A stretch of 64,000 bases of DNA from Perkinsela sp. CCAP 1560/9 (lineage: Eukaryota; Protista; Euglenozoa: Kinetoplastea), in assembly GCA_965644495.1 (NCBI GenBank), contig CBFFSA010000009.1, positions 62,001 through 126,000 on the forward strand, read 5' to 3'. The translations under genes were made by a program, and so were the position numbers. The notes under the pieces are model-generated. The model had not been told where the DNA came from, ran no database searches, and saw only the letters and a program-made list of their open reading frames with translations. Below, piece by piece: positions 2,232-55,248 of the stretch. Position 1 is the first letter of the stretch. Every line of letters begins with the position of its first letter.

Positions 2232-3824
2232 ATGAATCGCGTTACCGACACGCGTGATGAACAGTCACCCCCTGTTAAACGTAGGAAACTGCATCAAGAT
2301 GTCCCACATAACACGGCACCTTATCCATCTACTCGCCCCGGGAAAATACACGGGGCTGTTCTACCGCAAGAATATGACCTGGAACGAGTTATTGCGGACG
2401 TATTGCATCCTAACCCATCCTGGACGACATCCACAGCTGCGTGCGAATGGGCAAGAGTGGGATGTAATGAACATGGAGAGGTGACGGAACTTATGTGGGA
2501 CGCTGATTCCGATATCTGGGTTTGGCGATACTCGGGCGAATTGCATTTAGAACATCTTCCCAGGACCGTTTTGCGAGTATCCGCCACAGGGAACGATTTT
2601 TCTGGATCCGTTTGTTTAGATAATTTGCCGCCGAACCTGACGTACCTTAAGCTCAGTTTCAACGATTTTGCTGGTACAGTAAATTTTTCTCTTTTTCCGC
2701 CAACGTTGCAAGTCATTAATTTGGAATTTAACTTGTTTGAAGGTGGCATTGATTTGGGTAGCCTCCCAGCAAAGTTGAGGATATTGACGTTGACTAGAAA
2801 TCAGTTTTTTTCAGGCACCAATCAGTCTGCCCAGGACATGGATCTTGGTGCCCTGCCGGTACACATGGAAGTTTTCAATGTAGCTGAAAACAAGTTTTCA
2901 GGTAGGCTACACCTGAATAATTTGCCAGACACGCTTAAAGACCTGACTGTGCTAGATAACGAATTGACAGGTACGCTTGATTTGCAAGGTCTGCCATCAT
3001 CACTCGAGCTAGTAGATCTTTCAGAAAACCAGTTCGAAGGATCTCTGCAGTTGAATTCCCTTCCCCAGAACCTTAAATTATTTGCCGCGTCGGGCAACAA
3101 GTTTACGGGTATAACGAGTCTAGATACACTACCAAATGAACTGTACAAGTTGGATCTTTCCGAAAATCAGTTGGCGGGGACGTTAGACTTACGGCACTTA
3201 CCAGAGGAGCTTGAAGACCTTAACCTTTCGCGTAACGCATTCACGGGAGAGATCGATCTCCGCTCCCTACCTGATTCTCTTACCCACCTCCTTTTGTACC
3301 GTAACAAGCTATCTGGATCACCAGATCTCAGTGATTTGCCCGAGGAACTAACTTTTATGGACATCAGCAATAATGAATTTGTGGGTTCGTTTAAATTAGA
3401 TACACTTCCACCTTCACTTGAGAGTTTACGAATCAAACGCAATCAATTTACGGGCAATCTTCACCTCATCGATTTGCCTGACTCCTGCGTTGTTTTTATC
3501 GCTAGCCATAATAAGTTTTCGGGAGCCCTAGATCTGCAGGATATGCCGATCGGGCTTCAAACTCTAAAATTTGATCACAATGGCTTTAGCGATGTCACCG
3601 GTCTCATATCGCTCCCTAAAACGCTTGAAACTCTTTTGCTAAACCATAATTGTTTGGAAGGGAATATCCCACTCGATTCTCTCCCCGACACGTTATTGAC
3701 TTTAGCGTTAAGCGATAACCCAGAGCTCCATGGATTTGTCAGTCAAAAGGTACGGCGGTCCATAAATATATTGTTGGACAGAACTCATATTGGGATTGTC
3801 AAAGACCTGGGAAATGGCGAATAA
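2232..3824 (+). CDS. LRR protein subfamily A (A1), 530 aa, ~17 24-residue LRRs with N-terminal cap
   Basis: Intact ATG-stop ORF; SWxxSTxACEWxxVxC cap; repeats LPxxLxxLxLxxNxFxGxLDL; basic PPVKRRK near N-terminus; paralogue at 28721. Confidence 0.95.
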   Translation: MNRVTDTRDEQSPPVKRRKLHQDVPHNTAPYPSTRPGKIHGAVLPQEYDLERVIADVLHPNPSWTTSTAACEWARVGCNEHGEVTELMWDADSDIWVWRYSGELHLEHLPRTVLRVSATGNDFSGSVCLDNLPPNLTYLKLSFNDFAGTVNFSLFPPTLQVINLEFNLFEGGIDLGSLPAKLRILTLTRNQFFSGTNQSAQDMDLGALPVHMEVFNVAENKFSGRLHLNNLPDTLKDLTVLDNELTGTLDLQGLPSSLELVDLSENQFEGSLQLNSLPQNLKLFAASGNKFTGITSLDTLPNELYKLDLSENQLAGTLDLRHLPEELEDLNLSRNAFTGEIDLRSLPDSLTHLLLYRNKLSGSPDLSDLPEELTFMDISNNEFVGSFKLDTLPPSLESLRIKRNQFTGNLHLIDLPDSCVVFIASHNKFSGALDLQDMPIGLQTLKFDHNGFSDVTGLISLPKTLETLLLNHNCLEGNIPLDSLPDTLLTLALSDNPELHGFVSQKVRRSINILLDRTHIGIVKDLGNGE

Positions 3825-28720: not shown

Positions 28721-30313
28721 ATGAATCGCGTTACCGAGACGCGTGATGAACTGTCACCCCCTGTTAAACGTAGGAAAGTGCATCAAGATGTCCCACATAA
28801 CATGGCACCTTATCCATCTACTCGCCCCGGGAAAGTACACCGGGCTGTTTTACCGCAAGAATATGAGCTGGAACGAGTCATTGCGGACGTACTGCATCCT
28901 CACCCATCCTGGACGACATCCACAGCTGCGTGCAATTGGGCTGGAGTAGTGTGTAATGAACATGGAGAGGTCACGGAACTTATGTGGGGCGCGGATTCAG
29001 AACATGAGACATACGGGCCATTTTATGGCGCATTGCATTTAGAACATCTTCCCAGGACCGTTTTGCGAATATCCGTATCGGAGAGAGATTTTTCTGGATC
29101 CGTTTGTTTAGACAATTTGCCGACGAATCTCACGTACCTTAATCTCAGTTTCAACGGCTTTACTGGCGCAGTAAATTTTTCTCTTTTTCCGCCAACGTTG
29201 CAAGTCATTAATTTAGAAGTTAACATGTTTGAAGGTGGTATAGATTTGGGTAGCCTCCCAGCAGAGTTGAGGATATTGGAACTTGGGGGAAATCAATTTT
29301 TCTCAGGCACGATTCAGTCTGAAGAGGACATGGATCTTGGTGCCCTGCCAGTTCAGATGGAAACTTTCAATGCTGAACAAAACAAGTTTTCAGGTGAGTT
29401 ACACCTGAGTAATTTGCCAGACACGCTTAAACACCTGAGTGTGCAAGATAACGAATTGACGGGTACACTTGATTTGCAAGGTCTGCCATCATTACTCGAG
29501 GATGTAAATCTTTCTCAAAATTGGTTTTGTGGTTCTCTACAGCTGGATTCCCTTCCTGAGAACCTTACCTCATTTATCGTGTCGGGCAACAAGTTTACGG
29601 GCGTGTCGAGTCTAGATAAGTTACCAACCGGGCTGACCGATTTGAATCTTTCCAAAAATGCGTTGACCGGAACGTTAGACTTACGGCACTTACCCGATAC
29701 GCTTGAAGAACTTACCCTTTCGCGTAACGCATTCACGGGAGAGATCGACCTACGCTTCCTACCTGATTCTCTTACCCATCTCTTTTTGTACCGCAACAAG
29801 CTATCTGGATCACCAGATCTCAGTGAATTCCCTGAAGGGTTAATTGAGCTGGACATCAGCGATAATGAATTTGTGGGTTCCTTTAAATTAGATGCACTTC
29901 CACCTTCACTTGAGATTTTACGAATCAAACGCAATCAATTTACGGGTAATCTTCACCTCAACGACCTCCCCGAGGCTTGCTCTGAATTTATCGCTAGCCA
30001 TAATAAATTTTCAGGCGCGCTGAATTTGCAAGATATACCGGTCGGGCTTCGAACTCTAAAACTTGACCACAATTGCCTTACCGGTGTGTCTGGCTTTACT
30101 TCTCTCCCTGAATATTTAGGAAAGCTTTTACTTAACCATAACTGCTTGGAAGGGAATATCCAACTCGATACGTTACCCGATACGCTATTATTGAATTTAA
30201 GCGATAACCCAAAGCTACATGGATATGTCAGTCACAAAGCACAGGAAGGTAGAAATATTACGTTTGAAAGGACTCATATTGTGATTGTGGAAGAGCAAAA
30301 TGAAAATTTATAG
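28721..30313 (+). CDS. LRR protein subfamily A (A2), 530 aa
   Basis: Intact ORF, colinear paralogue of 2232-3824 including ~60 bp of upstream sequence. Confidence 0.95.
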   Translation: MNRVTETRDELSPPVKRRKVHQDVPHNMAPYPSTRPGKVHRAVLPQEYELERVIADVLHPHPSWTTSTAACNWAGVVCNEHGEVTELMWGADSEHETYGPFYGALHLEHLPRTVLRISVSERDFSGSVCLDNLPTNLTYLNLSFNGFTGAVNFSLFPPTLQVINLEVNMFEGGIDLGSLPAELRILELGGNQFFSGTIQSEEDMDLGALPVQMETFNAEQNKFSGELHLSNLPDTLKHLSVQDNELTGTLDLQGLPSLLEDVNLSQNWFCGSLQLDSLPENLTSFIVSGNKFTGVSSLDKLPTGLTDLNLSKNALTGTLDLRHLPDTLEELTLSRNAFTGEIDLRFLPDSLTHLFLYRNKLSGSPDLSEFPEGLIELDISDNEFVGSFKLDALPPSLEILRIKRNQFTGNLHLNDLPEACSEFIASHNKFSGALNLQDIPVGLRTLKLDHNCLTGVSGFTSLPEYLGKLLLNHNCLEGNIQLDTLPDTLLLNLSDNPKLHGYVSHKAQEGRNITFERTHIVIVEEQNENL

Positions 30314-35563: not shown

Positions 35564-36226
35564 AGTGATCTCTATAATGGGAAATAGGCACGAAAAAACT
35601 CAGCATACAAAAAATACTTGACAAAGAAATAGTTAAATTTTGCGGTAGGATATCACTCAAATTGGGAACTAAATATTATAGAATTAGACGGCCCGATTTA
35701 AATAATATTGTGTTATTATTGAATAATATAGTGTTAATTTGAGTATTGTATGTCTTTTCGAAATAGTAATTACATATTCTCATATTCAGAGAATTGGTAA
35801 TACAAACGTTTGAACGGCGGCCATGCTCATGTATTGGTCGCTTTGCTCTTGCATATTCCCCCTGCAACCTTTTCTTCGTCACCCTTTTCATAGGAATAAA
35901 TTATTGTTGGGAGAATGTTTTTTTCGGTGAATGTTTTACAATTACTACCCCCCCTCTCATTAATATTATAAACCTCCAAAAATGATTAAAGGGATTGTTT
36001 GTAGAAATTTAATGAGATTATAATTCTGAGACGCACTTTTATAACTGAACCCCTCCGCATCAAAGAGGCACCCCCCCCTTATTTTTCGCACGAGGGGGGC
36101 TAGGGGGTTATCGTACCACTTTTTCTTATAAAAGTTTGAGATCTGTACGTTCCCGCCGTTTTTAGGTCTCTTGGAAAAACAAAAAGATAAAATTATTTTT
36201 TTTTTTTTGATTTTTTTTACCTTATC

Positions 36227-37700
36227 ATGCCAAAAAATACATATCGACACCCGAGGGGTGGTCTTACAGAAAGTGGAATAGTGTTATTGCGCATGAGGTA
36301 TGGTCAGGGGGTTGCAAAGAAACAACTAGCTCGCGAGTTTAATGTTAATATAAAACATATTAGAAAATATTTGAAAAATGATTCGCTGGAAAATATTTAT
36401 ACTGAAAGCCCTGAAGTAAAAAAGAGGATGAAAAAAAGGAGAAATCTTGTTAAAATGCTCTTGAGCCTTTGGATCAAGCTGGGGTCTCATAAATGGGTCT
36501 TCTCGCAAGATTCGTGGAAAACTGAAGAGAAAGGGTGTAAACGTATCTTCTGACACCATCAATAGAGATATACGTTCCCTAGGCCACAAGTATGGGTCAC
36601 GGCCTTTGTCACAAGGACTGACGAAGGAAAAAGAAAAGGGTATTGTTTGCTTTAAAATGGTAAGAATTAAAATGGGACACCTCTCGTTTAGTTTTTACTA
36701 ACGAAAAGCTGTTCGATACAAATGATCATAGAAAAAAGATGTGGGTGACTCCAGGCAAAAAGCCCGCAAAGCGACAAACAGTGCGTTGGGCACCTAAGTG
36801 TCATGTATGGGGTGCCGTGGAGGTAGGCTATAGGAAACTTGTTGTTCTCTCTTCCAACTCAATTAGATGCGTTTCATAAATTTCATAAAATTATATCAAC
36901 ACACTAACTTTAAGGATCTTTATCTTTCGTGCAACGGGTTCACGGGGGAGATCGATCTTCGTTTCTTGCCTGATACGCTTAAACATCTTAACCTGAAGAA
37001 CAATAAGCTGTCTGGGTCATTAAATCTTAGTGCGTTACCGTTGCTGAATGGACTGGACATCAGTAATAATACGTTTGTGGGTCCTTTTAAATTAGACGCA
37101 CTTCCACTATCGCTCGAGATTATACGAATCAAACGCAATCAATTTACGGGCAATCTTCACCTCAGCGATATGCCCGAGTCCTGCTTTGCTTTTATTGCTA
37201 GCCATAATAATTTTTCAGGCGCGCTGAATTTGCAGAATATGCCGGAGGGTCTCAAAACTCTGAAGCTTGAAAGCACAATTGCTTTACCGGTGTGTCTGGT
37301 TTTGCTTCTCTTCCTGAAGATTTGGGAAAGCTTTTACTCAACCATAATTGTTTGGAAGGAAATATCCAACTCGATACGCTACCCGATATGCTATCCGTTT
37401 TGTCGTTAAGCAATAACCCAGGACTCTACGGAACTAAGCCAAAGAAACTAAGGCTTATCATGAAAAAAACCGAAATGACACTATTGCCAAATTGGCCACC
37501 GAACTCCCCTGATCTTTCCCCCATAGAAAGCGTGTGGAGTATGGTGCAAGAGCTTGTCGATGAGTACACTCCTTCAAATAAGGAAGATATCATAAAAAGT
37601 GTATGTAAAGCTTGGTCTAAATTACCTCAAGAATACATGTTGATGATTCGGTTTTGAGCTTCGATGCTCGGCTCAAGGCTGATATGGTACTTTCAAGGCT
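36227..37700 (+). pseudogene. Tc1 transposase pseudogene carrying a captured LRR-A segment
   Basis: HTH LAREFNVNIKHIRKY, FTNEKLFD, CHVWGAV, then the LRR segment, then WPPNSPDLSPIESVW. Confidence 0.85.
36912..37431 (+). pseudogene. Captured LRR-A fragment (~7 repeats)
   Basis: Aligns to A2 ~29705-30222 and A1 ~3213-3735 (GEIDLRFLPD...IKRNQFTGNLHL...NHNCLEGNIQLDTLPD); one frameshift at ~37272. Confidence 0.9.
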
Positions 37701-38556
37701 GCCGGTACCACTTTTCACGCAGGAACTGAGCCTTTCTTTTTTTCTTTCGGAGGTCGGTGCCAAAAATGCGGAACTCACGGTCCTGTACTGTTGCTGTAGA
37801 ACCGACTCTAGTGCTATCTAATGTGCAGCTCGTGGCATGTATTGCGAGGAAAGCGACAAACGCCTTGTGCGTAATTGTTCGCTCCTTTCCGAGCAGTAAA
37901 TTACACCAGTTCACGGAAAGATTGTTGTATTCTGACGGATACTGTACCCCCCCTACTTAGATGGGGGGCCACCGCCCAAGCGGCACTATTCTGCCATATT
38001 TTGCCGATCGCAGGGGTTTCGTCCTTTGGAGGCGTATTTTATTGTCGGAACCGGCCCCGCGGCGCGAAGCGGCGCTTTTTTTTTTGTCAGAAGCTTTCTT
38101 TCCTTTGGCGGTTATATAGCAGTGGTTACTAGCGGCTACTCTGTATATAGCGACTACTATTAGTTTTGAATGCATATTTATAACAATTTGTCGAAATCGT
38201 TGCGGTAAAAGAGGAATTAAAAATCACCCACCCTTGGACAAAGGGGGTAAAAATCACTCACTATTGGCAAACTTTTTTGCCAATAGTGGGTGTACCCCCC
38301 TTTACAAGATATTTAGCTCGTTTTCAACATTGCTGGGGTTGTTTACAACCTCTGCCTTTTCCTTCTCTATGGTGTCCGGGGTAGGGTGGATCGAGTAGGG
38401 GTCCAGCGTCCGTATCCTCGATTTTGGCACCAATCACTGTGTTTAATAGCATGTACGTCTCGGGATTCGATTTGGTAGTACATGCCGCTCGTCATTGGTT
38501 AATCGCAGGTTCGACTCCCGCTCGTTTCATTTTCACTACAAGCGGTCTTGTTTAAT

Positions 38557-38745
38557 TTAGGGTATAGTCATTGAACATTTCGTATTTCGATATAGTTTCA
38601 TGTTGGACCACAGATTTTCAATCGGATTTAGATCCCTAGAGTCCGCAGACAAAACTCTTCTATACATGTATATTCTATACGTGTATGGGAAGAGACAAAA
38701 CTCTTCAACATAGGCTTTGATATGGGCGAAGATAGGGCACTTCAT
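38557..38745 (-). pseudogene. Tc1 transposase fragment
   Basis: CPIFAH...SRDLNPIENLWSNMK. Confidence 0.6.
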
Positions 38746-39534
38746 TTCTGGAGGTGTACACTATCGAAAATCAATCTTCAGTCTTTAAGATGTCGTCGTA
38801 GAATCGTTTCTTGTTTATTAACACTTTCTTGTTTATTAGTATGACACAAGCTTCATGAAAAAAATTCTACTTTTTTTGGTCAACAATATTTTTTTTGCGT
38901 CATCCCAAAAATTTCGAACTTGTCGGGCCGGGGGGGGTCACCCCCAGGTGTGGAGGATGGAAAATCATCCCCGCGGCATACTCTACAACTTCCCTGCGCT
39001 CGATTCATCCACCTATACAGTCCGGGTCAAACATCTCGGTCCATGATTGGACCCTCGCTTCTGAATACAAATTCTTTATGCGCCTGTAGTCGTCTTGTAG
39101 CTTCCGTTCTTCGCTGATGGCGTCTTCAATTTGGGACAAAGCTCCACGGCTATGTCGAGAGTCCCCTCTTCCCATTCTTTTACCAAAGTTTTTGCAACTC
39201 GATTTCAACACCACCGCGTTGACGTTCGAAGTCCCTTATCTGGGCATGTTCGTGTAAATTCACGTAATGCTCATCCCGCGCTACCTTATCTGGGAGCTTT
39301 ATGTTCTATAATGCTATATAAATGGTATACAGGGGGGACATTTTTCTGTGTAATACTAATCTGGAGAACATTAATCTGTATGATATTAATCTGTGTTAAC
39401 TCGAAAATATCTGGCCCGACAGAAATCTGTGTTAAAAAAATAAAAATGCGCCGCAGGCGAAATTCTTCTTTTTCCATGCATTTTCTCCGCATTTTCTCTG
39501 AAAATTTCTTTTTTCTTGATTTGTATTTGTAATT

Positions 39535-40257
39535 ATGATTGTCTCTATGCTCTCGGCCGATGTAACGGAACCGTTAAGAAAGAAAGCCTGGATAGAAACG
39601 AACTCATCCGACACGACACTTTCAACGAGTAGTTCTAATGTGACTGGAACATCTCGTCCATCCAAAGTCAGTGCCGTGTCGTTACCCGTGGAGTACGATT
39701 TGATGAGACTCGTAGAAATCCCTCCACGCTCGTGGTCCACCGATACCCCGGGATGTAGATGGGATCGAGTCAGATGTAACGACAAGGGCGAAGTGATTTT
39801 GATAAACTGGAGTGGCGCGATGGGCGAAGACACTAGCAAGAAACTGCAAGGTCGGCTCCATGTAAAATATTTGCCGTCCGAGTTGGGAAACTTAAGCCTG
39901 CAGAACAACTTCCTGTCGGGTGAGTTTTCCTTCGATCAGTTGCCTCCGAAATTGGAATTCATTAACATATCCATCAATCAGTTCACGGGTACTCCAGATT
40001 TTCGTCACCTGCCACCCTTTCTAGTCTATCTTAATATGTCTGACAATAAATTTTCCGGTCATATTGAATTTGATTTCGTGCACGAAAACATGCGCGACAT
40101 AATTTTAGCTTTTAATGCAGAACTTGAAGGCTTCCTAAATATCAGAGACGAGTTAAAAAATCTGTATTATACTGTAGCGCGAACAAAGATTACGGTAAGC
40201 AACGGTGAGATGAGACGCTACAGACCGAGCCGGTCTGCTTGTGGAATACGTGGATGA
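39535..40257 (+). CDS. LRR protein subfamily C (C2), 240 aa
   Basis: Intact paralogue of C1. Confidence 0.92.
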   Translation: MIVSMLSADVTEPLRKKAWIETNSSDTTLSTSSSNVTGTSRPSKVSAVSLPVEYDLMRLVEIPPRSWSTDTPGCRWDRVRCNDKGEVILINWSGAMGEDTSKKLQGRLHVKYLPSELGNLSLQNNFLSGEFSFDQLPPKLEFINISINQFTGTPDFRHLPPFLVYLNMSDNKFSGHIEFDFVHENMRDIILAFNAELEGFLNIRDELKNLYYTVARTKITVSNGEMRRYRPSRSACGIRG

Positions 40258-41336
40258 TGGTGAGTTAATACCTGTAAAGGGAAATAGACACGACGAACCT
40301 CAGCATACAAAAAATAATTGACAACTAAATAGTGGATGTTGCGCTGGGATAGAATTCAAATTGGGAGTCAAATATTATAGAATTAGACGGTCTTATTTAA
40401 ATACTATAGTGTTAGTTCGAATAATATAGTGTTCGGAGAATCTTTTTACTGAGAATGTTTTACAGTTACTATTTTGTGTGGCTAACAAAGGGGAAAAGGT
40501 GAAAAAATGGTAATTCTTCTTTAAAATTTGCATATGGGTTTCTTTTTGTTTCGTTTCTTCACGCGCAAAGTCTTTGTGTTGAGATCTGCAAAATGTAATC
40601 AGCTCAAACGGACATTTTTCTGAAAAGTTAAGGGGGAGGCGCCTTATTGGTGCGGAGGGGTTATTATAGATAGAGGGGTAAAGTGATCTCTATAATGTGA
40701 AATAGGCACGACAAAACTCAGCATACAAAAAATACTTGACAAAGAAATAGTTAAATTTTGCGGTGGGATATCACTCAAATTGGGAGCTAAATATTATAGA
40801 ATTAGACGGCCCGATTTAAATAATATTGTGTTATTATTAAATAATAGTATTAATTTGAGTATTATATGTTTTTTCGAAATAGTAATTACATATTCTCATA
40901 TTCAGAGAATTGGTAATACAAACATTTGAACGGCGGTCATGCTCATGTATTGGTCGCTTTACTCTTGCATATTCCCCCTGCAACCTTTTCTTCATCACCC
41001 TTTTCATAGGAATAAATTACTGTTGGGAGAATGTTTTTTTCGGTGAATGTTTTACAGTTACTACCCCCCCTCTCATCCCGCGCTACCTTATCTGGGAGCT
41101 TTATATTCTATAAAGCTATATAAATGGTATACGGGGGGGGCATTTGTCTGTGTAATACTAATCTGGAGAACATTAATCTGTATGATATTAATCTGTGTTA
41201 ACTTGAAAATATTTGGCCCGACAGAAATCTGTGTTAAAAAAATAAAAATGCGCCGCAGGCGAAATTTTTCTTTTTCCATGCATTTTCTCCGCATTTTCTC
41301 TGAAAATTTCTTTTTTTTTGATTTGTATTTGTAATT

Positions 41337-53508: not shown

Positions 53509-55248
53509 CAATGGTTTCAGTTGATCTTGCCCCCCCCCTCGGAATTTTGATTTTTTTTATCCATTTTTGCTCATCTTTGCAGCATTGGAGAGATCTCGTT
53601 CCCCTAGCGAAGAGCTTTGCCGCCTTTTTTTCATAGAGACCCTCTGGTGCCCCCTGGGTCCGAAAAACACTGTTTTTTTGGACGTTTTCTGTGTACACAA
53701 CCATTTTTTGTCACATTTTCCCGATTTTTTGTACATTTTGAACATGTAAGTACGAGTAATAGTGTTCTAAATTGATAATTTGAAAGCTCTATGTCTAGTA
53801 CCATCCCTATCGCCTAATTTAATATAGTCAACACCTCTACATTATGCAGACTAGACCCTCTAACCCCAAACAGGGGGAGTACGTACAAGGATGGAATGAC
53901 AAAAGAGAAGACAATCCCCCAATATCCCACAAAGGAACCGTGGCATTACCTCTTTGCGAGAGAAAAGAAATAATAAAGCAACACAAAAAGGGATTAAGCA
54001 TACATGAATTATCTAATAATTTCGGACGTGACCGTCGCACCATAAGAAGAATTGTTAACCTGTGCAAGGAAGGAGAAGGTCTTACACCCCAAAAATCCCC
54101 AGGAAAAAAATCATCAAGGCGGTTTAAGGACCTTGTAAAAAAAATTGTGAATGATGAAAACGAAACGTACGATGGTTGCTTAACTTATACTTGGATACAC
54201 GAGCAAGTGCTGAATATGGGGTATAAATGTTCGTTAAACAAAATAAGAACTATTTTGAAAAATATTGATTACGGTAGATGGGCTAAGTCGCCGAACTGTG
54301 ACCTAACTGAGGAACACAAGTCGCAGCGTTTGAGATTAGCAAACGAATTGCTTACATGGCCTAAAGAAGATTTAAACAAAATCATTTGGACCGATGAAAA
54401 GTTGTTTACCTGTGGGGTTCATGGGTCTCAGTTTTTCATTGGACCTAAAGGGTGCCAAAGAAAACCTCGCTGCAGAAACCGTAGGTGGTATGGGGGGAAG
54501 GGGGTAATGGCTTGGATGGGTATTAGTGTAGAACACGGATTTTTCTTGCACGTGTTTGAACCCAATGACAATACAACTTATGAAAACGCGCACAAGGTCA
54601 CTGGGGGAGTGATCCTTGACTCCTTTCAGAAGCCTAATGGGTTTTTACATTATCTCAAAGACCACGTTGACAATGTGACTGTGCAAATGGATAATGCTAC
54701 CACCCATAACTTGGCAAAAGGTGAATTGATTAAATATCGTATTAAACAATTGTCTTGGCCAGCGAATTCGCCTGATTTAAATCCAATAGAAAATGTTTGG
54801 AAACAAATGAACGGTATCATAAAGAAAAAAATTAAGCCCCACAATCATGCTACTCTCGCCGATGCCATTAAAAAAGCTTTTCAGATTCTAAAACGTCCTC
54901 AAGAAAAACGTAAAGTGTGCAACACAATTGATTCAGTCCCTAATAGACTTCAAAAAGTGTTGCAAAACAATGGAGGCCATTCCGGATACTAGTTCTTTTC
55001 CTTTAGAGTTAACTTTTGGACATAAAATCCGTTTTTCGTTCCATTTTTGATATGGTAAAAAAATATCATTTTTTATTATTTTGGTCAACTTTCGGGTCAC
55101 CCAAGGGGCACCAGGGGGTCTCTATGAAAAAAAGGCGGCAAAGCTCTTCGCTAGGGGAACGAGATCTGTCCAATGCTGCAAAGATGAGCAAAAATGGATA
55201 AAAAAAATCAAAATTCCGAGGGGGGGGCAAGATCAACTGAAACCACTG
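53509..55248 (+). mobile_element. Intact Tc1-like transposon
   Basis: ~155-bp TIRs (CAATGG.../...CCACTG), TA TSD; inserted into a CAGGGG-family end whose empty site is seen at ~33890. Confidence 0.95.
53844..54992 (+). CDS. Tc1-like transposase, 382 aa, DD32E
   Basis: Paired-like HTHs; IIWTDEK, VMAWMGI, QMDNATTH, WPANSPDLNPIENVW, GGHSGY. Confidence 0.93.
   Translation: MQTRPSNPKQGEYVQGWNDKREDNPPISHKGTVALPLCERKEIIKQHKKGLSIHELSNNFGRDRRTIRRIVNLCKEGEGLTPQKSPGKKSSRRFKDLVKKIVNDENETYDGCLTYTWIHEQVLNMGYKCSLNKIRTILKNIDYGRWAKSPNCDLTEEHKSQRLRLANELLTWPKEDLNKIIWTDEKLFTCGVHGSQFFIGPKGCQRKPRCRNRRWYGGKGVMAWMGISVEHGFFLHVFEPNDNTTYENAHKVTGGVILDSFQKPNGFLHYLKDHVDNVTVQMDNATTHNLAKGELIKYRIKQLSWPANSPDLNPIENVWKQMNGIIKKKIKPHNHATLADAIKKAFQILKRPQEKRKVCNTIDSVPNRLQKVLQNNGGHSGY

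What the first reader, a model, noticed from the sequence alone, without database searches (positions are those of the whole stretch)
36912..37431. Seven LRR-A repeats captured inside a Tc1 transposase and fused in frame to its C-terminus
Seen: a ~520-bp LRR-A segment, distinct from both A1 and A2, replaces the part of the transposase that holds the second catalytic Asp. It has no TSD, lies in the same orientation, and reads straight on as LSNNPGLYG|TKPKK...WPPNSPDLSPIE. Known: DNA transposons capture gene fragments through gap repair (Pack-type elements). Inference: evidence for a route by which LRR modules are copied, moved and stored as donor cassettes.
Basis: partly seen in the sequence, partly recalled or inferred. 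Interest (0 to 1): 0.8.

Follow-up and report, generated by a model that had tools for sequence, protein, structure and literature searches.

The report
Dead transposon patched with LRR DNA
A broken jumping gene inside a cluster of leucine-rich-repeat genes was patched twice with copies of LRR-gene DNA, once with a 0.5-kb piece and once with a whole gene, but it has not moved since and nothing shows it feeding sequence back to working genes, so it is a well-documented case of a known DNA-repair accident.

Summary
Real, and larger than reported. LRR-A DNA (36910-37432, 7.5 repeats) replaces 55 bp holding the second Asp of a DD35E Tc1-like transposase. The same element carries a second, 2.8-kb insert (37681-40473) with an intact LRR gene and ends in its right TIR at 40662. 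Short-read contigs support the junctions. The donor paralogue (A3, 99% identical) survives only on contig C59, a second haplotype, where a 5.2-kb unit containing it is tandemly repeated starting exactly at the left junction. The in-frame fusion is accidental. It follows a frameshift in the LRR part, passes through about 11 non-native codons and joins a dead transposase. Best reading (0.6): a single-locus Pack-TIR-like element made by template-switch gap filling, after which the captured piece seeded ectopic recombination and amplification. An earlier scan report describes a similar single case in this genome (s1-682897).

The parts
36048..36907 (+). Left TIR and 5' part of an IS630-Tc1-mariner (DD35E) element; transposase start at 36227, several frameshifts and a stop
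   Evidence: 93% to the C6 copy over 837 bp; DDE_3 start, weak; disablements shared with C59, except that the first Asp is N only in the window
36879..36893 (+). About 15 bp of locally duplicated filler, 14 bp before the left junction (approximate limits)
   Evidence: absent from relatives L007, L008, L013
36903..36909 (+). Left junction J1: ACTAA (transposon) plus 2 filler bases
   Evidence: X2 record 11, X4 record 26; C59 has one J1
36910..37432 (+). Insert 1: 3' part of LRR-A paralogue A3, 7.5 repeats, lacking the ~29-codon C-terminal cap; +2 frameshift at 37270-37271
   Evidence: 99% to the A3 3' part on C59, 68-79% to five other A genes
37433..37437 (+). Right junction J2: ACTAA, i.e. native ACT plus 2 extra bases; repeats the J1 flank and also a 7-mer 12 bp downstream
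   Evidence: bridged by X1 record 4 and X2 record 13
37438..37680 (+). Middle piece of the transposon: C-terminal transposase with WPPNSPDLSPIE (third acidic residue); +1 near 37463, +2 at 37635-37636
   Evidence: DDE_3 E=1e-4
37681..40473 (+). Insert 2 (2.8 kb): locus-specific and repeat DNA (Z), LRR upstream module (U), an intact LRR gene and its short 3' flank; 4-bp microhomology TTGT at the right end; no transposon bases lost
   Evidence: transposon reference position 1110 at both 37680 and 40474; junctions in X1, X2, X3
39535..40257 (+).
   Evidence: ORF, LRR_1 and LRRNT_2, 95% to B3 and 89% to B1
40474..40662 (+). 3' end of the same transposon with the right TIR (40629-40662)
   Evidence: 92.8% to the C6 copy, positions 1110-1300
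36031..36047 (+). Left flank: host repeat ending in TA, then 4 extra bases before the TIR
   Evidence: uninterrupted form present in 5 exact copies in the genome; loose ends at 36044
40663..40668 (+). Right flank ATTATA, the continuation of the host repeat; second TA missing

Best explanation
A single-locus Pack-TIR-like element made by DNA repair, not by transposition of the cargo. (1, shown) A DD35E Tc1-like element inserted at a TA in a repeat inside an LRR gene cluster and decayed. (2, inferred) A break inside it was repaired by template switching: 55 bp were lost and 523 bp were copied from the 3' part of LRR-A gene A3, leaving short filler at both joins. (3, inferred) A second switch 250 bp further on copied 2.8 kb with a whole LRR gene and returned through a 4-bp microhomology; this may have been part of the same event. 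(4, shown as structure, inferred as order) On a second haplotype (C59) the captured piece recombined with the A3 gene itself. That replaced A3's C-terminal cap with the transposase tail and produced a 5.2-kb unit, then amplified to five copies by unequal exchange. The captured DNA acted as a recombination trap that rearranged its donor. It did not act as a mobile or donor cassette.
For: Transposon sequence is colinear across both inserts, with 55 bp and 0 bp lost. 55 bp is about 4% of the 1.3-kb element, near the 4.6% median for gap-filled Pack-TIRs (PMC8277862). Junctions carry filler, a repeated ACTAA and a TTGT microhomology. Insert 2's upstream module is 97.7% identical to DNA 4.7 kb upstream. 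All six copies share one locus. The C59 array starts exactly at the left junction. The A3 3' part occurs in two versions that differ at 5 sites within 36996-37227, while copies c1 and c3 differ by only 2 events in the other ~2.3 kb, as expected if a donor copy recombined with the inserted copy. The unit's other join cuts a repeat that continues natively in the last unit. Contig depth over the unit is roughly 2.3-3 times that of single-copy pieces (a rough measure only). A sister element on C13/C2 also has its interior replaced, by non-LRR repeat DNA.
Against: No A3 with its native tail is in the assembly, so the pre-capture donor and its distance cannot be shown. The donor of the first 275 bp of insert 2 is also missing. 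No allele with the uninterrupted transposon at this site was seen. C59 is joined to bacterial DNA at both ends, so its exact copy number is unverified. One copy (c4) carries the first copy's version although it follows A3's 5' part, and other copies have variant tracts of their own.
Confidence: 0.6

Rival explanations
1. Long insert, then deletion. Insert 1 originally carried the nearly whole A3 gene with its upstream DNA, as insert 2 carries a whole gene. The 5.2-kb unit arose from that allele, and a later deletion from the transposon into mid-A3 made the left junction. The seven-repeat cassette is then a remnant, not a unit of capture.
For: A3's 5' part is found only joined to the chimeric 3' end, and no native-tailed A3 exists. 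Insert 2 shows that multi-kb captures occur here.
Against: The independent deletion must end only 55 bp from the insertion point, within an 860-bp target, and leave ACTAA matching the other junction. A simple duplication does not give two diverged versions of the 3' part unless a second allele was the template.
Confidence: 0.25
2. One reading: a transposition-competent Pack element (36048-40662) that captures LRR modules, moves them and stores them as donors for intact genes.
For: Both TIRs are present, and an intact LRR gene lies between them. Internally deleted family members are 95-98% alike, so the family moved fairly recently. A2 and A3 share an old similar tract.
Against: One locus only. 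Neither TIR abuts TA (12 of 12 relatives do). No uninterrupted transposase was seen among the copies of this family that I examined. The longest exact runs shared with intact A genes inside the captured part are 20-42 bp, no longer than those between intact genes (32-80 bp). The A2-like tract is only 86% identical, more diverged than the transposon is from its sister copy (7%), so it predates the capture.
Confidence: 0.07
3. Excision-triggered capture: the transposase cut the element out, and abortive gap repair from the sister chromatid picked up LRR DNA while rebuilding it (the transposition-dependent form of gap filling).
For: Both ends are damaged (4 extra bases on the left, TA missing on the right), which a cut at the ends could explain. 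The family was active recently.
Against: Both inserts lie deep inside the element, 860 and 190 bp from the ends, with little or no loss of transposon sequence. PMC8277862 takes this pattern as a sign of internal breaks.
Confidence: 0.06
4. Assembly artefact.
For: C59 is a bacterial-eukaryotic chimera. No single contig spans the whole element.
Against: Each junction is crossed by short-read contigs. J1, J2 and J3 occur on two contigs that differ by 1.5%.
Confidence: 0.02

Closest known systems
Single-copy Pack-TIRs of animals formed by transposition-independent gap filling (Tan et al. 2021, PMC8277862)
   Same: Non-transposon DNA of 0.1-5 kb between two colinear parts of one TIR element; internal breakpoints; small gap (4% against a median of 4.6%); microhomology or short filler; single locus; a nearby template for at least part of the cargo.
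   Different: Two inserts in one element, one with a complete gene. The donor of insert 1 is itself fused to the transposon. The captured piece seeded a tandem amplification. The host is a protist (Perkinsela-like kinetoplastid according to earlier scan reports, not tested here).
Pack-MULEs and multicopy Pack-TIRs (FoSTeST model, e.g. Drosophila Ssk-FB4; PMC8277862)
   Same: TIR element carrying host gene sequence; template switching at its origin.
   Different: No dispersed copies, no distinct TSDs, no sign of a functional chimeric protein; superfamily is IS630-Tc1-mariner, not Mutator or Foldback.
Templated insertions from microhomology-mediated template switching or end joining (MMBIR, polymerase theta; PMC8421209 and PMC12426944, seen as abstracts only)
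   Same: Short locally templated filler, small deletion, copied nearby DNA.
   Different: The enzyme is not identified here, and insert 2 is long for end joining (own knowledge).
IS630-Tc1-mariner transposons with DD35E spacing (e.g. Traveler, PMC7093834, abstract only)
   Same: DDE_3 domain, 35 residues between the second Asp and the Glu, TIRs, TA duplication in relatives.
   Different: No phylogeny was run, so family placement is open; Tc1 proper is DD34E (own knowledge).

Membership tests
IS630-Tc1-mariner element | DDE/D transposase domain | tested here: met
   DDE_3 on both pieces; relatives pass the cut-off; TDEK...QQDGA...SPIE in relatives, DD35E
IS630-Tc1-mariner element | Terminal inverted repeats | tested here: met
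   36048 onward and 40629-40662, 88% complementary over 34 bp
IS630-Tc1-mariner element | TA target duplication | tested here: inconclusive
   12 of 12 relatives have it. In this copy the left TA is 4 bases off the TIR and the right one is missing, though the right flank continues the host repeat
Tc1 family proper (DD34E) or Traveler (DD35E) | Catalytic spacing and phylogenetic position | tested here: inconclusive
   spacing is 35; no tree built
Pack-TIR (criteria of PMC8277862) | Internal sequence of 100-5000 bp flanked by two parts of one TIR element, both termini present | tested here: met
   inserts of 523 bp and 2.8 kb; both TIRs
Pack-TIR (criteria of PMC8277862) | Parental copy at least 90% identical | tested here: met
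   A3 3' part on C59, 99%; parts of insert 2 are 95-98% to neighbours, with no single parent for all of it
Pack-TIR (criteria of PMC8277862) | Parental copy free of flanking transposon (excludes segmental duplication) | tested here: not met
   every A3 3' end in the assembly is joined to the transposon, hence 'Pack-TIR-like' rather than a strict member
Single-copy gap-filled Pack-TIR | Small internal gap; microhomology or filler at breakpoints | tested here: met
   55 bp and 0 bp lost; TTGT, ACTAA, 2-base fillers
Single-copy gap-filled Pack-TIR | Orthologous element without the insert in an outgroup or other allele | not testable with these tools
   no relatives of this genome are served; both haplotypes carry J1-J3
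Multicopy (transposed) Pack element | Copies at other loci with distinct TSDs | tested here: not met
   six junction copies, one locus, shared left flank
Silent donor cassette for gene conversion | Recent tracts shared with expressed genes | tested here: not met
   five other A genes compared; no young tract; more distant LRR genes not compared

The most novel reading that the evidence does not exclude
In this genome Tc1-like shells routinely pick up LRR genes or modules by template switching, and a share of them (such as the 4.6-kb element here with an intact LRR gene) are mobilised in trans or used as recombination substrates. This would make transposon capture a main route by which the large LRR family is dispersed and reshuffled.
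Probability: 0.07. Interest if true: 0.6.

Novelty: new member of a known kind. Interest (0 to 1): 0.27.

Why it matters
It is a clear, read-supported example of gap-filling capture in a protist lineage where DNA transposons were barely known (PMC8101967). It also shows one consequence directly: a captured gene piece became a substrate for ectopic recombination that truncated its donor and amplified 5 kb. It would matter more if such elements moved LRR genes around, but this case gives no evidence of that.

Tried and rejected
Nested transposition as the source of either insert: rejected, no TIRs or target duplication at the insert ends. A1, A2, A0, C20 or C19 as the donor: rejected, 68-79% identity. 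A functional LRR-transposase fusion: rejected for now. There is a frameshift upstream, a nonsense codon in A3's 5' part shared by all four C59 copies, a non-native linker and a frameshifted tail. In run X3, which looks like RNA, no contig crosses J2. Donor-cassette role: the one enriched tract (A2, 37185-37376, scan p about 0.01) is too old. The C13/C2 element as a moved Pack copy: rejected, the two copies share flanks at 100% and the filler is repeat DNA. Eukaryote DNA truly inserted in a bacterial gene on C59: not supported, since the right flank does not continue the broken gene. Searches for a native-tailed A3 and for the donor of 37681-37960 found nothing. The big protein search was not used, as nothing rests on absence of relatives.

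Full report
Observation. The segment is there. Bases 36910-37432 encode seven full 23-residue LRRs and part of an eighth. They are 79% identical to A2 (28721-30313) and 75% to A1 (2232-3824), and lie in the orientation of a transposase that starts at 36227. The closest family member (contig C6, 93%) shows what was replaced: 55 bp including the QQDGA motif with the second catalytic Asp. The family has DD35E spacing, TIRs beginning AACCCCTCC, and TA on both sides in 12 of 12 complete copies. It is an IS630-Tc1-mariner element; 'Tc1' in the strict sense is not shown.

The fusion. The read-through from LSNNPGLYG to WPPNSPDLSPIE exists, but it is not a clean in-frame fusion. Native transposase reads HTAKESKAYLEKTEM. 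Here two extra bases at the junction shift the frame, and an extra A about 25 bp later restores it at KTEM, so about 11 codons are foreign to both parents. A +2 frameshift at 37270-37271 cuts the first five repeats off from the fusion, and the tail is frameshifted again at 37635. The 5' part of the transposase has several frameshifts and a stop on both haplotypes; its first Asp is N only in the window.

The transposon continues. Reference position 1110 falls both at 37680 and at 40474, and 40474-40662 is the element's 3' end with the right TIR, 92.8% identical to the C6 copy like the 5' part. Between the two lies a second insert of 2.8 kb with an intact 240-codon LRR gene (39535-40257). It has an upstream module 97.7% identical to DNA 4.7 kb upstream, and a 4-bp microhomology (TTGT) at its right end. 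The left flank is a host repeat found uninterrupted in five exact copies, and the right flank (ATTATA) continues it, so both TIRs most likely belong to one insertion. Neither TIR abuts a TA. The whole element is 36048-40662.

The donor. A search of the genome found the same locus on contig C59 at 98.6%. C59 has the left junction once, followed by four further tandem copies of a 5.22-kb unit that starts exactly at that junction. The unit runs: LRR 3' part, transposon middle, Z, U, repeat DNA, and then the 5' two-thirds of an LRR-A gene, A3, which runs straight into the next LRR 3' part. A3's 3' part is 99% identical to the insert. A3 has a nonsense codon near codon 76 in all four copies. No A3 with a native tail exists in the assembly. 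C59 lacks the intact gene and the right TIR, and differs from the window by 1.5% in the transposon 5' part, so I read it as a second haplotype. C59 is joined to bacterial DNA at both ends, probably a contig chimera, so its copy number is unverified.

Reads (Logan contigs of four runs from one study, possibly including the source sample). J2 is bridged in X1 and X2, J3 (37680) in X1, X2 and X3, and the 40474 join in X3. J1 is crossed by an X2 contig that ends at the graph branch 30 nt inside the insert, and by an X4 contig with 21 nt on the left. An X3 contig carries 946 nt of A3's 5' part into the same 3' part, confirming the donor-linked form. Depth over the unit is roughly 2.3-3 times that of single-copy pieces in X1 and X2. 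That fits one plus several copies on two haplotypes, though the tool warns that depth is no copy number. X3 looks like RNA: it has a poly(A) loose end, a leader-like loose end before an LRR gene, depth on LRR coding regions and none on the transposase 5' part. In it A3 is covered but no contig crosses J2. This is inference, since the run kind is not on record.

Donor-cassette test. Within the captured part the longest exact runs shared with five other A genes are 20-42 bp, no more than intact genes share among themselves (32-80 bp). One region, 37185-37376, is closer to A2 (86%) than to the others (70-77%; scan p about 0.01). That 14% divergence is twice the distance between the transposon and its sister copy, so the exchange predates the capture. 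Among the six copies of the captured part there are three versions about 1% apart, so they exchange among themselves or come from different alleles.

Mechanism. Best (0.6): template-switch gap filling at internal breaks of a resident element, then recombination between the captured piece and A3, then unequal exchange. Shown: colinearity, small or no loss, junction filler, a single locus, the array boundary, and a derived second join in the unit. Inferred: the order of events, the original position of A3 and the repair pathway. ACTAA on both sides of insert 1 and the 55-bp distance between its joins favour one event. The support is modest, because ACT is native on the right and a 7-mer 12 bp downstream could also have supplied the filler. 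Rivals: a long insert later trimmed (0.25), a mobile Pack and donor cassette (0.07), excision-triggered repair (0.06), artefact (0.02).

Context. The genome has at least 150 DDE_3 matches, and LRR coding DNA fills about a seventh of this window, so a repair filler made of LRR DNA needs no special affinity. A sister element on C13 and C2 has its interior replaced by non-LRR repeat DNA. LRR-A homologues include a Perkinsela LRR protein at 33% identity. Earlier scan reports call the organism a Perkinsela-like kinetoplastid with about a thousand LRR genes and describe another single TIR element with an LRR fragment; I did not test these.

Comparison and verdict. It works like the single-copy, gap-filled Pack-TIRs of Tan et al. 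2021 (PMC8277862). It fails their criterion of a transposon-free parent, and it fails the tests for a transposed multicopy Pack element and for a conversion donor. It is a new member of a known kind, with two unusual details: a whole gene in a second insert, and amplification seeded by the captured piece. Interest 0.27.

Noticed in passing
G000:C59 1-7338 and 40489-49198 (L037, L039, L040, L053): Both ends of contig C59 are bacterial (metabolic genes with a PEP carboxykinase gene cut at the join; a phage-like DNA methylase on the other side) around 33 kb of the eukaryotic locus. The flanks do not continue each other and the stretch searched occurs nowhere else in the assembly: probably a chimeric contig.
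   Followed up: partly
   Followed up: partly
window 36889-37425 and 37648-37788, run X4 (sample S3): One contig matches from just left of J1 to 37425 and then has 24 unlike letters; another has 257 unlike letters left of 37648. A different allele or RNA ends; unexplained.
   Followed up: no
L058 (G000:C13:13861-15074) and G000:C2:1111000-1112339: A sister transposon lacks its left TIR and has about 520 bp of its interior replaced by pieces of other repeats, including a short motif that resembles a spliced-leader end. The two copies are identical over the 892 bp compared, flank included.
   Followed up: partly
C59 last unit (L031:5684-7040): A 1.36-kb nested pair of repeats sits in the LRR upstream module, flanked by a ~155-bp duplication of that module.
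   Followed up: partly
window 37672-37701: The 9-mer TCAAGGCTG occurs at the left join of insert 2 and again 20 bp later, a possible microhomology or templated scar; donor not found.
   Followed up: partly
window 38255-38292: 17-bp perfect-stem hairpin in insert 2; the first C59 copy has the 4-base loop inverted.
   Followed up: no
window 38917-39443: The upstream module is a mosaic: after about 39300 the window copy matches the B1 module, and the last C59 copy matches other paralogues, a sign of exchange between LRR upstream modules.
   Followed up: partly
G000:C20:166382-179155: LRR genes of the B type in a tandem array with a 2,922-bp period.
   Followed up: no
window 53844-54992: An uninterrupted 382-codon Tc1-like transposase of another family; the C59 allele has it split by a frameshift.
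   Followed up: no
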